A stretch of DNA of 63,552 nucleotides, filler included, from Octopus bimaculoides (taxonomy: Eukaryota), in the NCBI RefSeq assembly GCF_001194135.2. It is 7 parts of 7 records of this genome, joined end to end, with 100 filler letters (N's around TTAATTAATTAA, not from the genome) between each part and the next. Parts side by side here need not be neighbours in the genome. Positions count along the whole stretch, not along the records: positions 54,862 to 58,394 come from NC_068983.1; 6 more parts are not named here. One strand, 5' to 3'. Both the position numbers and the translations under genes were made by a program. Below are positions 54,862-58,394 of the stretch, one piece after another. The notes under the pieces are model-generated. The model saw only the letters and a list, made by a program, of their open reading frames with translations, did not search any database and had not been told where the DNA came from. Positions within the stretch are counted from its first letter, which is position 1. Every line of letters starts with the position of its first letter.

Positions 54862-55267
54862 AAATACCACTGTCCTGAACAACTAGAACACGGTTTCAAA
54901 CCCAGCTCGTGGAAGAGGGACATAACTTTTTTTTTTTTTCCGGCGGTCGTATCAATACATTTTTGTATACACATATATACGTAATCCAATTTTGTGTGCA
55001 TTTGTTATATATGCTCCGCTACCTTCTTTCTTTCCTTCTTCCCTTCTCTCTTTCTTTCTTTCTTTCTCTATTTCTTTCTTTCCTCACGAAAACCATGCTT
55101 TCTCCCTTTCTACATTAGTAACGTCCTGTATCTATACGTTACTCTTCTCCCCTCCATAAGCTTAAGATACTGATACGGACGCCGATAAACAAACAAAATA
55201 ACGTTATGCCCCTATCTCCCGAGCTGGGTTTGAAACCGTATTCTGGTTGTCGAGGATAATGGTATTT
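54862..55267. repeat. Imperfect 65-bp inverted repeat
   Basis: 54862-54926 versus reverse complement of 55203-55267 (core ggtttcaaacccagctcg / cgagctgggtttgaaacc). Confidence 0.8.
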
Positions 55268-55274
55268 CTTTTGT

Positions 55275-55510
55275 CAGTTGGCGTACAGGAATTGATGTGA
55301 GCGGTCAGCCAGTTATTTTTAGCGTAGGAGGTGATCGGTGACCCTTTCCGGTCACCGAAAGTTTAGAAAAACAAGTTAGGAACTGTACTAAACTGACCCA
55401 GCTTTGGAGGGGGTAAGGTAGCACTGTTGAGCTACGGTATTTGTCTTAAATACGGTAGGCAGTTGGTATCGAACAGTTGGCGTACAGGAATTGATGTGAG
55501 CGGTCAGCCA
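55275..55510. repeat. Exact 37-bp direct repeat pair enclosing a 9-bp hairpin
   Basis: cagttggcgtacaggaattgatgtgagcggtcagcca at 55275-55311 and 55474-55510; tcggtgacc-ctttcc-ggtcaccga at 55335-55358. Confidence 0.9.
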
Positions 55511-55849
55511 ATGAAGATGGACAAGCAGTTGTTGTAAACAAAGTCAGTGAATGAAGAACGTGAGCCGGTGTGAAGGCCATAACGCAATCCATAGTAAAAA
55601 CTTGTTTAATAACCTATGCACATTTCAATGCAATATCCCGACTCACTCTTGTAAGAGATAAGAATATGGGGTCTTGCATCTCTTCAGGGTCAAGTTACAT
55701 TAATTCACAGCAGACAGCAAAAAAACAGACAACATTAATAGTTGTCCTTAAATTACATGTGTATAAACAGGTTGTAACGACATGAACATATTGAAACTGC
55801 TTACAATATCGGTTAAGAAAACCGTTATATAGTAAAGTAAGTAGTGTTG

Positions 55850-56684
55850 TTAACTTAGGATATTAACTTAGGATGTTAAGTAGCGACAAGCAATCGACGC
55901 TGTAAATTCAATAAAAAAAACGGTGGACTTTTGAAAGTAAATAAAACGAAGAAAGAAAATTGTCTGTTATATATCTTAATAAAAGTATAAATTAATGGTC
56001 AAAGAGAGGTAAATCTAGTAAATAATATTTTTGATTTATATAATTCACTCAATTGTGAATAATCATATCAAATAATTATATTTCATTTTAAGTTTAGAAT
56101 AGTTATGAGACTTCTTTTAAGGTTATGTAAACAAGATAATTTAGAAAATATAAATTAAAAATAATAAAATAAAATAAATTAGGTTACATTCAGATTGCAG
56201 CCATCAAAGTTTTTTTTTTTAAATATATATATTACATTAGCTTAGTAGTTGGATTCAAATACAATATTAAAAGAAGGAAGGGATTTAATCGATAAGGTAA
56301 AAAGTAAACAATTATTACGATGCATCTGTAAATGGATCTGTAAATGGTGAATAGTTGTCATAGAGACTTTAGTCTCTCTCTATCACCTTTCAACATAATT
56401 ATGTTTTAAGGAACAGTAGAACAATTTAACAACATAATAAAAATGAGTTTTATTTTTGATGATGCTTGGTTTCATAATTCCTGTCATTCAGCTTAGCAGC
56501 CGCTGATTAGGTTGTAATTTGGTATTGGAAGGTTAAGGGCTTCCTTGATTCCTGCCAGAGAAGCAAGTAGCTATCACCATCGAAGGCATCGTTGTGGAAC
56601 GAGGAGTTGTCACGTAGAAGGTCTGTCGCGCAACTGTCTGAGAAAGTGAAACTCACTCTTTAAGTACCAGTTTTACTACGCATG
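55850..56684. repeat. Local tandem duplication, copy 1
   Basis: Aligns co-linearly with 57307-58394; identical blocks of 37, 34 and 19 nt. Confidence 0.85.
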
Positions 56685-56760
56685 CGCACTCGAGGGGCTT
56701 CCGGTGGTGAAGTCCTCTGTGCATGCGCAGAATAGTACTTCCTCAATGGCGGCTATAATT
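56675..56760. promoter_or_regulatory. Housekeeping-type promoter motif cluster
   Basis: NRF1-like acgcatgcgcac (56678-56689) and tgtgcatgcgca (56718-56729), ETS cttccggt (56698-56705), YY1/Kozak-like aATGGCGGC (56745-56753); CpG-rich island in AT-rich DNA. Confidence 0.55.
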
Positions 56761-56773
56761 TCGCGCCACTACA

Positions 56774-57139
56774 GATATTTCTGATTGGACGGGCAACACT
56801 TTTCATTAATGTTTTATGTAGTGTTTTTGGTACCGAAACACTTTCAAACTTCGTATACTTGTATATTTTGTGTTATAGAACAGATAAAAAATTTTGTATT
56901 CGAAGTTATTTCATGTAAGAAATTGTCGTATTTCGGTAATTTCAACCAATCACTGACGTCAGTGATTGGTTGAAATTACAGAAATACGACAACTTTAACA
57001 TGAAATAACTTGCAATATATAATTTTTTGTTAAGAAAGCTAAGAGAAAAAGATGTTTTATATGACACATTCTACCAGTATCTCAAGTTTGAAAGTGTTTC
57101 GTTAAGAAAACAAGTGTTACTCGTCAAATCAGAAAGATC
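56774..57139. mobile_element. Whole-length palindromic (hairpin) MITE-like element
   Basis: Symmetric about 56957/56958; perfect 44-bp core 56936-56979; outer ends gatatttctgattggacgggcaacac / gtgttactcgtcaaatcagaaagatc. Confidence 0.75.
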
Positions 57140-57306
57140 CCGGTACTATCTTACATAGAATTATAAATGATAAATCAAGTAACTAATATCAAAACTCATG
57201 ATTGTACCTATAGAAACAGATTCTATGAGAATAAGCGTAAACCATGTTAAATTAATATCATTATATGGATTTAACTAATCCCTTCAGGCAGGTTATTAAG
57301 TAAAGC

Positions 57307-58394
57307 AACCTAGGATATTAAGCTAGGATGTTAAGTAGCTACATGCATATGACCCTATTATATCAAATAATGCATCAGATGTTTGAGAAAAAGGCAACTG
57401 ACCTAAAACGAAGGAAGAAAACTTATCTATAATAGATCATAACAGAAATAAAATTAACATAAAAAATTCATGGTCAAAGAGAGGTAAATCTAGCAAAATA
57501 ATATATATTTTAACAATTTAAATAATTTACTCAAATGTGATTAACCCTATGAAATTATTATATTGATTTTTGAATTAAAATATTTTGAGACAATTTAAGG
57601 ATATGTAATCAAGATAATTAAGAAATTATAAATTATAAAATAAATTAGGTTACATTCAAATTGCAACCATCAAAAATTTAAATATACATTACATTAACTT
57701 AGTAGTGAAATTAAATTATTGGGTCTACCGCTTCCACAGGTTCCCTCAACCGCTAGGCTGTGGCACTTTCTCACACAGCTATCCTCATCCATTCTCGCCA
57801 CATGACCATACCAGCACAATCATCTCTCTTGCACACCACAACTGATGCTTCATAGGTCCAACTTTTCTCTCAATGTACTTATACTCTGTCGAGTATGCAC
57901 ACTGACATTACACATCCATCAGAGCATACTGGCTTGATTCCTTGCGAGCTTACGCATCAGCCACATTCGGATGGTGCTTTTTACATGCCACCAGTACAGG
58001 AGCCAGTCAGACAGACCTGGCATTGACCACATTCGGATGGTGCTTTTTATGTGTCTGTAAAATAAGTATTGATAAGTGTTGTCATAGAGACTTTAGTCTC
58101 TCTCTATCACCTTTTAACAGCATTTTTAATGAAGAGACATCAGAACAATTTACACTATAATAAAAAGGTTTTATTTATGATGATACTTGGTTATACAATT
58201 CCTGTCATTCAGCTTAGCAGCCGCTGATTACATTGTTGTTTGGTAATGGAAGGTTAAGGGCTTTCTTGATGCCTGCCAGAGAACAGTGTAAAAGTGCTTC
58301 GTGGAGGAGCGAGGTGTTGTCACGTAGAAGGTCTCAAGCTCAACTCCCTGAGATAATGAAAGTAACTGCTTAAGTACGAGTTTTACTACGCATG
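57307..58394. repeat. Local tandem duplication, copy 2, interrupted by RTE-derived sequence (about 57720-58050) and ending at a gap
   Basis: See copy 1; terminates ttttactacgcatg|NNN. Confidence 0.85.

What the first reader, a model, noticed from the sequence alone, without database searches (positions are those of the whole stretch)
55850..58394. Tandemly duplicated non-coding module with perfectly conserved blocks between UBE2O and SLC25A11
Seen: two diverged co-linear copies, with many indels, share identical blocks of 37 nt (56354-56390 / 58078-58114, containing the hairpin agagac-ttta-gtctct), 34 nt (56476-56509 / 58197-58230) and 19 nt (56606-56624 / 58316-58334), plus ttttactacgcatg. 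No shared reading frame survives. All three blocks contain TGTCA, and block 2 reads TGAATGACAG on the minus strand, matching the Pbx/Prep decamer TGANTGACAG. Inference: a duplicated promoter/enhancer under purifying selection, or a duplicated small-RNA gene. An RNA reading is supported by a conserved minus-strand AATAAA and a plus-strand TGATGA...CTGA.
Basis: partly seen in the sequence, partly recalled or inferred. Interest (0 to 1): 0.75.

Follow-up and report, generated by a model that had tools for sequence, protein, structure and literature searches.

The report
Tandem duplicate of a promoter flank
About 1.45 kb of non-coding octopus DNA that ends in a housekeeping-type promoter motif cluster has been duplicated head to tail; the short identical blocks may be retained regulator-binding sites, but nothing marks an RNA gene, so it is a fairly ordinary local duplication.

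Summary
Copy A (55851-56684) and copy B (57306-58394, cut by the piece edge) are co-linear, head to tail and 83-84% identical with 18 indel events. They share exact blocks of 37, 34, 19 and 16 nt at the stated coordinates. Differences are over-dispersed in the right-hand 330 nt (P 0.002-0.007), so the blocks exceed a uniform-rate expectation, but only modestly.

The unit is non-coding. It has no Rfam match, no consistent RNA fold and no covariation, and the TGATGA...CTGA pair lacks a terminal stem.

Copy A runs straight into a dense NRF1-like x2 / ETS / YY1-like motif cluster (56680-56753; 0 of 20,000 simulations reproduce it). Copy B is cut inside the first of these sites. The module is therefore the flank of a duplicated TATA-less promoter. 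The direction of transcription and the gene are not visible.

The differences between the copies are repeats. A 371-bp palindromic MITE follows copy A, and a 334-nt composite dispersed repeat sits inside copy B. Both have relatives elsewhere in Octopus chromosomes.

The module had no match in 128 kb of sampled Octopus DNA. True copy number and cross-species conservation could not be tested. The 'UBE2O/SLC25A11' context belongs to other pieces. Interest is low to moderate.

The parts
55851..56248 (+). Copy A, left AT-rich part (GC 16-30%); begins with the 13-nt tandem TTAACTTAGGATA x2.3
   Evidence: 82.7% identical to 57306-57705 with 14 gap events. Tandem 13-mer. Composition. No significant homology further upstream.
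56249..56353 (+). Copy-A-specific 105 nt, replaced in copy B by the repeat-bearing segment
   Evidence: No significant alignment to 57706-58077.
56354..56684 (+). Copy A, right part (GC rising to 43-50%). Holds the exact blocks 56354-56390, 56476-56509, 56606-56624 and 56669-56684.
   Evidence: 84.2% identical to 58078-58394 and 77.9% outside the three long blocks. Differences over-dispersed. TGTCA at 56356, 56482 and 56608.
56679..56753 (.). Promoter-like motif cluster: CGCATGCG/GCATGCGC (56679-56687), CTTCCGG (56698-56704), GCATGCGC (56721-56728), ATGGCGGC (56746-56753). The last reads AGCCGCCATTGAG on the minus strand.
   Evidence: Positions. The cluster appeared in 0 of 20,000 Markov simulations, even with the local GC-rich composition. 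GC 49%, CpG o/e 1.0. The minus strand matches the sINR consensus GSCGCCATYTTG at 10/12 (PMC2715227). Factor assignments rest on my own knowledge of vertebrate promoter motifs.
56772..57142 (.). Palindromic MITE-like insertion in the tail of unit 1, centred at 56957/56958 (TGACGTCA flanked by CCAAT boxes)
   Evidence: Arms found. DNA fold -92.6 kcal/mol, z = -16.9. A related copy with 32-nt, 97% complementary terminal inverted repeats lies at an unrelated O. vulgaris locus, L001 466-890. Only sub-threshold Rfam miRNA hits.
57143..57305 (+). Remaining tail of unit 1, up to the junction with unit 2
   Evidence: No repeat partner inside the piece. Its counterpart in unit 2 would lie beyond 58394.
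57306..57705 (+). Copy B, left AT-rich part
57720..58053 (-). Copy-B-specific composite dispersed repeat. 57720-57957 carries a frameshifted retroelement-ORF-tail-like reading on the minus strand. 57954-58053 is a 30-nt motif repeated 66 nt apart.
   Evidence: Translations. The only protein relative is P0001, 'Hypothetical predicted protein [Octopus vulgaris]', E 1.6e-12, 83% identity. 89-90% nucleotide matches at L001 and at two places in L002; up to 9 hits across 57954-58053. GC 42-50% against 15-29% in the flanks.
58078..58394 (+). Copy B, right part with the same exact blocks; cut by the piece edge inside the first NRF1-like site (…ACGCATG)

Best explanation
This is a local head-to-tail duplication of non-coding DNA. 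The unit was about 1.45 kb when it arose, and its GC-richer end carries a TATA-less, housekeeping-type promoter motif cluster (NRF1-like x2, ETS, YY1/sINR-like).

Shown:
- There are two co-linear copies with a fairly sharp left boundary.
- They differ by about 16-17% in substitutions and by many indels.
- Each copy or its tail has been invaded by a dispersed repeat.
- The module does not code for protein.
- Copy A runs directly into the promoter-like cluster, and copy B is cut inside the first site of that cluster.

Inferred:
- Unit 2 continues beyond the piece with its own copy of the cluster. The locus would then carry two tandem promoters for one unseen gene, and the direction of transcription is undetermined.
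- The perfect 37/34/19-nt blocks lie within about 330 bp of the cluster. They are most simply protein-binding sites of the proximal promoter, or of the transcribed leader, retained in both copies. They contain three TGTCA cores of the TALE/Meis type, a near-decamer TGAATGACAG and an ACGT core. The spacers between the blocks drifted faster (78% identity).
For: - Co-linear copies and exact blocks.
- No homology upstream of about 55824-55851 / 57292-57306, as expected for a two-unit tandem duplication.
- Over-dispersed differences in the right part.
- GC rises from 16-20% to 43-50% towards the cluster.
- The motif cluster appears in 0 of 20,000 simulations.
- TGTCA occurs in all three blocks in one orientation.
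- No ORF is shared, Pfam finds nothing, and no protein relative exists among 5.8 billion clusters.
- No match to the module in 128 kb of Octopus DNA, while the two insertions do match there.
Against: - No transcription start, chromatin or expression data exist, and no gene is visible.
- The factor names are vertebrate motif knowledge carried over to a cephalopod.
- With only two paralogues, constraint cannot be separated from patchy gene conversion or chance.
- Overall divergence of the block-bearing part (JC 0.18) is hardly lower than that of the AT-rich part (0.20).
- The AT-rich part also shows some over-dispersion (P 0.01-0.11).
- The CCAAT box near the decamer in copy A is lost in copy B.
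- The TGTCA spacing is 126/126 nt in A but 123/115 nt in B.
- Whether copy B really continues into a promoter lies beyond the piece.
Confidence: 0.55

Rival explanations
1. The duplication is the same, but it is functionally inert. The identical blocks are leftovers of chance, local mutation-rate differences or short gene-conversion tracts between the tandem copies. One promoter copy, probably copy A, which is now followed by a MITE, is a decaying relic.
For: - The excess of long runs is modest (P 0.036 for the 37-mer alone).
- The AT-rich part, which has no obvious function, also has 24-nt exact runs and some over-dispersion.
- Overall divergence is nearly equal in both parts.
- Indels cluster mismatches and inflate dispersion.
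- The spacing and a neighbouring CCAAT box are not conserved between the copies.
Against: - The 37- and 34-nt runs together have P 0.0007-0.002.
- The blocks lie in the promoter-adjacent part and share an oriented TGTCA (P 0.02-0.05).
- The cluster after copy A is still intact at all four motifs despite about 16% divergence elsewhere.
Confidence: 0.3
2. The two copies are members of a dispersed repeat: two nearby insertions of a non-autonomous element, or the two long terminal repeats of a degenerate LTR-type element whose short internal part is 56685-57305. In that case they are not a locus-specific duplication.
For: - Direct repeats of more than 830 nt flank a short internal segment.
- A purine-rich AAGTAAAG sits just before copy B.
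- The region is rich in other repeats.
Against: - No match to the module in 128 kb of O. vulgaris and O. sinensis DNA, in which both neighbouring insertions are found repeatedly.
- The left ends do not start with a shared TG.
- The same purine-rich motif also precedes copy A.
- I read no tRNA-complementary primer site after copy A. This was not formally scanned.
- The motif cluster is of the housekeeping, TATA-less type rather than LTR-like.
Confidence: 0.1
3. Each copy carries a small non-coding RNA gene: a C/D-box-like RNA spanning TGATGA...CTGA (56457-56506 / 58178-58227), or a roughly 260-nt minus-strand transcript ending at the conserved AATAAA.
For: - TGATGA and CTGA lie 40 nt apart in both copies, and block 2 sits directly upstream of CTGA, where a guide would lie.
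- The minus-strand AATAAA is conserved.
- Copy A folds somewhat better than shuffles (z -1.8 on the plus strand, -2.4 on the minus strand).
Against: - No Rfam match on the blocks at E <= 10.
- Copy B shows no fold signal (z -0.4 and +0.4), and its minimum-energy structure differs from that of copy A.
- Only 2 of 71 and 2 of 60 predicted pairs change on both sides.
- The helix that should close a C/D kink-turn is 5 bp in A and 3 bp in B, counting G-U pairs.
- Copy A has UUGAUGA rather than RUGAUGA.
- The candidate would be only about 60 nt long.
- AATAAA occurs 12 times in the piece.
Confidence: 0.05

Closest known systems
Tandem (segmental) duplication of a promoter region giving tandem or alternative promoters
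   Same: The copies are head to tail and co-linear, have a sharp outer boundary, include a promoter-type motif cluster, and later diverged and took up transposable elements independently.
   Different: Neither the gene nor any transcription start is visible. The second copy is truncated by the piece edge, so a duplicated promoter is inferred from only 7 shared nucleotides of the first site.
TATA-less housekeeping promoters built from NRF1, ETS/GABP and YY1 (sINR) sites
   Same: Two GCATGCGC cores, CTTCCGG and ATGGCGGC lie within 75 nt. Local GC is 49% and CpG o/e is 1.0 in an otherwise AT-rich stretch. The match to GSCGCCATYTTG (PMC2715227) is 10/12.
   Different: The motif definitions come from vertebrates, and binding in cephalopods is untested. 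The island is only about 100-230 bp long. The YY1/sINR-like element is compatible with either direction of transcription.
Pbx:Prep 'DECA' sites (TGATTGACAG), often with a nearby NF-Y site (PMC6023610)
   Same: Block 2 reads TGAATGACAG on the minus strand in both copies. The Prep/Meis half, TGACAG, is intact. Copy A has a CCAAT about 35 nt away.
   Different: Position 4 deviates, in the Pbx half TGAT. The CCAAT is lost in copy B (CCATT). There are no binding data.
C/D-box small nucleolar RNAs
   Same: UGAUGA and CUGA elements are conserved in both copies, with a conserved stretch upstream of CUGA.
   Different: There is no closing stem and no Rfam hit. The candidate is about 60 nt long. Copy A lacks the purine before UGAUGA. 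No fold conservation is seen.

Membership tests
Local tandem duplication | Two co-linear copies in the same orientation, with the end of unit 1 abutting the start of unit 2 | tested here: met
   Offsets run from 1455 to 1724 nt. The order of all blocks is preserved.
Local tandem duplication | Homology stops at the outer boundary, with no further copy upstream | tested here: met
   Alignment of 54862-55850 with 56685-57305 scores no better than shuffles. The right boundary lies beyond the piece.
Local tandem duplication | The unit is not a dispersed repeat (low genomic copy number) | tested here: inconclusive
   No hit in 128,203 nt of O. vulgaris and O. sinensis DNA. This excludes only very high copy numbers. 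Whole assemblies could not be searched.
TATA-less NRF1/ETS/YY1 promoter | A cluster of the consensus motifs within about 100 bp | tested here: met
   Motifs at 56680, 56698, 56721 and 56746; 0 of 20,000 simulations reproduce the cluster.
TATA-less NRF1/ETS/YY1 promoter | Transcription start sites and a downstream gene | not testable with these tools
   There are no expression data, and the piece holds no exon.
Pbx:Prep DECA site | The decamer TGATTGACAG | tested here: inconclusive
   TGAATGACAG is a 9/10 match and is conserved in both copies. Consensus taken from PMC6023610.
Pbx:Prep DECA site | Occupancy by TALE proteins | not testable with these tools
   This needs ChIP or an in-vitro binding assay.
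C/D-box snoRNA | C box RUGAUGA and D box CUGA | tested here: inconclusive
   Copy B has AUGAUGA and copy A has UUGAUGA. CUGA is present in both, 40 nt downstream.
C/D-box snoRNA | A terminal stem of 4-6 bp bringing the C and D boxes together | tested here: not met
   The longest helix between the 10-nt flanks is 5 bp in A (including G-U) and 3 bp in B, and it is not conserved.
C/D-box snoRNA | A match to a curated covariance model | tested here: not met
   No Rfam hit on 56350-56690 or 58078-58394 at E <= 10.
C/D-box snoRNA | A guide of 10-21 nt complementary to rRNA or snRNA upstream of the D box | not tested
   No cephalopod rRNA sequence was at hand.
Structured RNA in general | Fold stability and compensatory changes shared by both copies | tested here: not met
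   z = -1.8 and -2.4 for copy A but -0.4 and +0.4 for copy B. Only 2 of 71 and 2 of 60 pairs changed on both sides.
LTR pair of a retroelement | TG...CA termini, a primer-binding site after the 5' LTR and a polypurine tract before the 3' LTR | tested here: inconclusive
   The left ends share no TG. AAGTAAAG precedes both copies. The right ends are not visible. No formal scan for a primer site was made.
MITE (for the palindrome 56772-57142 only) | Terminal inverted repeats and dispersed related copies | tested here: met
   The ends read GATATTTCTGATTGGACG / CGTCAAATCAGAAAGATC. A related copy with a 32-nt, 97% complementary TIR lies at L001 466-890.
MITE (for the palindrome 56772-57142 only) | Target-site duplication | tested here: inconclusive
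   No clear duplication could be read at either copy, and no empty site was available.

The most novel reading that the evidence does not exclude
Both tandem copies are kept as working alternative promoters because the three TGTCA-bearing blocks form a cephalopod-specific cis-regulatory module, a TALE-site triplet at roughly 120-nt spacing, that must accompany each promoter. Alternatively, block 2 with its TGATGA...CTGA frame is a lineage-specific, non-canonical small RNA absent from Rfam.
Probability: 0.1. Interest if true: 0.45.

Novelty: new member of a known kind. Interest (0 to 1): 0.2.

Why it matters
If both copies are active, the locus would be a small natural experiment in promoter duplication in a cephalopod. 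It would show which short elements survive about 16% divergence next to a housekeeping-type promoter. That would give concrete candidates (three TGTCA-bearing blocks and an ACGT block) for reporter or footprinting tests in a group whose cis-regulation is poorly known.

If the copies are not both active, this is one more neutral local duplication riddled with transposable elements, and it can be dropped from a list of candidate RNA genes.

Tried and rejected
- **Rfam:** a scan at E <= 10 hit only the palindrome, with plant miRNA families far below their gathering scores (39.8 vs 80 bits). These hits reflect a long hairpin, not membership.
- **tRNA scan:** none found.
- **Coding potential:** no shared frame. 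The minus-strand tail LWQ(E/A)SRKPLTF(Q/H)YQ... is shared, but its changes are mostly replacements and a frameshift lies upstream. Pfam finds nothing.
- **Six-frame protein search:** a 1,295-residue concatenation of all open stretches of 34 or more codons from the non-repeat parts found nothing at E <= 1e-3 among 5.8 billion clusters. This also failed as a route to contigs of the same locus.
- **Exact look-up of two window ORFs in public assemblies:** not on record.
- **Exact block searches:** the 34-nt block (metagenome and prokaryote genome contigs) and the 24-nt core of block 1 (metagenome contigs only) gave 0 hits. These collections probably hold no cephalopod DNA, so the result says little.
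- **Internal triplication of the right part** (suggested by the 126/126-nt TGTCA spacing): no similarity between the three 126-nt thirds.
- **Extension of the duplication upstream of 55851:** only a doubtful 14-nt stretch, 12/14 identical.
- **Reaching the locus through 'SLC25A11' or 'UBE2O':**
- **The bacterial promoter/terminator scanner:** not used, because the sequence is eukaryotic.
Full report
**Scope.** Only window positions 54862-58394 are genome sequence.

**1. The observation.**

Reading the piece and the repeat finder show two co-linear direct copies. Pairwise alignment defines their parts:
- Copy A, 55851-56248, pairs with copy B, 57306-57705. This part is AT-rich, 82.7% identical, with 14 gap events.
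- Copy A, 56354-56684, pairs with copy B, 58078-58394. This part is 84.2% identical, with 4 gap events. It ends at the piece edge.
- Between these parts, 105 nt of A (56249-56353) stand opposite 372 nt of B (57706-58077) with no detectable similarity.

The following are also all present in both copies:
- the hairpin AGAGAC-TTTA-GTCTCT;
- TGTCA in every block;
- TGAATGACAG on the minus strand;
- the minus-strand AATAAA;
- the plus-strand TGATGA...CTGA.

**2. Is it more than chance?**

The duplication is beyond doubt. The perfect blocks were tested against uniformly scattered differences:
- A run of 37 or more has P = 0.036. A 37-run together with a 34-run has P = 0.0007-0.002.
- A test that does not depend on picking the blocks, the dispersion of differences per 15-30-column window, gives P = 0.002-0.007 in the right part and 0.01-0.11 in the AT-rich left part.
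- Outside the three long blocks the right part is only 77.9% identical, lower than the AT-rich part.
- Jukes-Cantor distances are 0.18 for the right part and 0.20 for the left.

The right part is therefore a mosaic of identical islands and fast spacers. As a whole it is not much better conserved than obviously non-functional DNA. Indel-associated misalignment and gene conversion could produce part of this pattern. A 5-mer shared by all three blocks on one strand arises by chance with P = 0.02-0.05.

**3. What the module is not.**

It does not code for protein:
- No frame is shared.
- Pfam finds nothing.
- A six-frame concatenate of all open stretches finds no relative among 5.8 billion protein clusters.

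It is not a recognisable RNA gene:
- Rfam at E <= 10 gives nothing on the blocks, and there is no tRNA.
- Copy A folds slightly better than shuffles (z -1.8 and -2.4), but copy B does not (z -0.4 and +0.4), and the structures differ.
- The consensus folds show 2 of 71 and 2 of 60 pairs with changes on both sides.
- The C/D-box idea fails on the terminal stem, which is 5 bp in A and 3 bp in B including G-U pairs. The candidate would be only about 60 nt long, and copy A has U instead of a purine before UGAUGA.
- AATAAA occurs 12 times in the piece, so its presence carries little weight.

**4. What lies around it.**

GC content climbs from 16-20% in the left part of each copy to 43-50% at the right end. 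Immediately after copy A come four motifs within 75 nt:
- CGCATGCG/GCATGCGC at 56679-56687;
- CTTCCGG at 56698;
- GCATGCGC at 56721;
- ATGGCGGC at 56746.

From my own knowledge of promoter motif surveys in vertebrates, these are the cores of NRF1, ETS/GABP and YY1 sites. None of 20,000 first-order Markov sequences of the same length contained such a cluster, even when generated with the composition of the local GC-rich 230 bp. Copy B is cut by the piece edge at ...ACGCATG, inside the first of these sites.

On the minus strand the last motif reads AGCCGCCATTGAG. That is a 10/12 match to the strict initiator GSCGCCATYTTG, which sits at -10 to +5 in human TATA-less promoters (PMC2715227). I recall that the same element on the plus strand is also known as a downstream YY1 site. 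The direction of transcription therefore cannot be read from the sequence. The blocks lie either upstream of a plus-strand start, at about -50 to -380, or inside the leader of a minus-strand transcript.

**5. The differences between the copies are transposable elements.**

The B-specific segment reads on its minus strand, across a frameshift...STEYKYIERKVGPMKHQLWCAR / LCWYGHVARMDEDSCVRKCHSLAVEGTCGSGRP. Its only protein relative is a 100-residue 'Hypothetical predicted protein [Octopus vulgaris]' (P0001, E 1.6e-12). The RLRWYGHVARM...GRPRKTW tail of P0001 is, from my recollection, typical of the end of non-LTR retrotransposon ORF2. That family assignment was not tested.

Fetching the P0001 locus and four further Octopus loci gave 128,203 nt of O. 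vulgaris and O. sinensis chromosomes. This sample is biased towards retroelement neighbourhoods. BLASTN of the piece against it shows:
- 57720-57957 matches at 89-90% in three places.
- The 30-nt motif repeated at 57954-58053 matches in many places, up to depth 9.
- The right arm of the palindrome matches L001 694-843 at 76%.
- The duplicated module matches nowhere.

The L001 relative of the palindrome is a 425-bp element with 32-nt, 97% complementary terminal inverted repeats. The window's 371-bp palindrome (56772-57142; DNA fold z = -16.9) is therefore a palindromised member of a MITE family. Its central TGACGTCA and CCAAT boxes belong to the element, not to the host promoter. The sub-threshold Rfam hits to plant miRNA families only reflect the long hairpin.

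These matches also show that the piece comes from an Octopus-like genome.

**6. Most likely explanation.**

A segment of about 1.45 kb was duplicated head to tail. It contained a housekeeping-type promoter and about 830 nt on one side of it. The copies then diverged by about 16-17%. A MITE landed, or was already present, in the tail of unit 1, and a composite repeat landed in unit 2.

If unit 2 continues as unit 1 does, the locus carries two tandem promoters. The identical blocks are best read as factor-binding sites next to those promoters. They carry a TGTCA core three times and the near-decamer TGAATGACAG. The published Pbx:Prep decamer is TGATTGACAG (PMC6023610), so the match is 9/10, with the mismatch in the Pbx half.

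The steps shown are the duplication, the lack of coding capacity, the motif cluster and the repeat insertions. The steps inferred are promoter activity, the second promoter copy, factor identities and constraint on the blocks.

**7. Rivals.**

- *The blocks mean nothing* (chance, conversion tracts, mutational cold spots). This fits the small overall difference in divergence and the non-conserved spacing (126/126 nt in A, 123/115 nt in B) and non-conserved CCAAT.
- *The unit is a dispersed repeat or an LTR pair.* This is disfavoured by the lack of hits in a sample where the neighbouring repeats are found repeatedly. That sample excludes only very high copy numbers.
- *A small RNA gene.* No positive evidence remains beyond two short motifs.

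**8. Novelty and verdict.**

Tandem duplication of regulatory DNA and tandem promoters are well known. This is an undescribed instance in a cephalopod and is of modest interest.

The decisive tests could not be run, because no cephalopod assembly can be searched by nucleotide sequence with the tools at hand. Those tests are copy number in whole Octopus assemblies, the sequence beyond 58394, orthologous alignments, and CAGE, ATAC and small-RNA data.

Noticed in passing
window 56772-57142 (centre 56957/56958); relative at L001 466-890: A 371-bp almost fully palindromic element sits directly after the promoter-like cluster. Arm identity is highest at the centre (93%), and the single-strand fold has z = -16.9. 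It belongs to a MITE family with about 30-nt terminal inverted repeats that is also present at an unrelated O. vulgaris locus. Its centre carries TGACGTCA flanked by two CCAAT boxes. If transcribed from the adjacent cluster, it would form a hairpin of about 180 bp.
   Followed up: partly
window 57720-58053; L001 10015-10181 and 4174-4330; L002 11967-12204 and 14025-14165: The copy-B-specific insert is a composite of dispersed Octopus repeats. The first component is a frameshifted retroelement-ORF-tail fragment whose relative, P0001, is annotated only as a hypothetical protein. The second is a 30-nt motif, GCATCAGCCACATTCGGATGGTGCTTTTTA, repeated 66 nt apart, which recurs many times in the sampled loci.
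   Followed up: partly
window 54862-54938 and 55191-55267, with 55022-55084 between them: Two 77-nt arms, 82% complementary, flank a (TTCT)n / 20-nt microsatellite. The left arm touches the piece edge. This may be an inverted pair of a short repeat or another MITE. Apart from weak low-complexity matches to the microsatellite, there was no hit in the 128-kb Octopus sample.
   Followed up: no
window 55275-55311 and 55474-55510: A perfect 37-nt direct repeat, 199 nt apart, encloses a short hairpin (GGTGACCCTTTCCGGTCACC). It may be a partial local duplication or a long target duplication around an insertion.
   Followed up: no
window 56356, 56482, 56608 (copy A) and 58080, 58203, 58318 (copy B): The three plus-strand TGTCA cores are spaced exactly 126 and 126 nt apart in copy A, but 123 and 115 nt apart in copy B. 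The three 126-nt thirds show no other similarity, so this is not an internal triplication.
   Followed up: partly
window 55850-55879 and 57310-57335: Both copies begin with a 13-nt unit, TTAACTTAGGATA, repeated about twice. A short purine-rich AGTAAAG lies just upstream of both left ends and could be microhomology at the duplication junction.
   Followed up: no
window 56746-56758, minus strand: AGCCGCCATTGAG matches the strict initiator consensus GSCGCCATYTTG at 10/12. The promoter-like cluster could therefore fire leftwards through the conserved blocks rather than rightwards.
   Followed up: partly
L001 572-590: The O. vulgaris copy of the MITE carries a short run of telomere-like TTAGGG repeats in its left half, at the place where the window copy instead has the inverted duplicate of its right half.
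   Followed up: no
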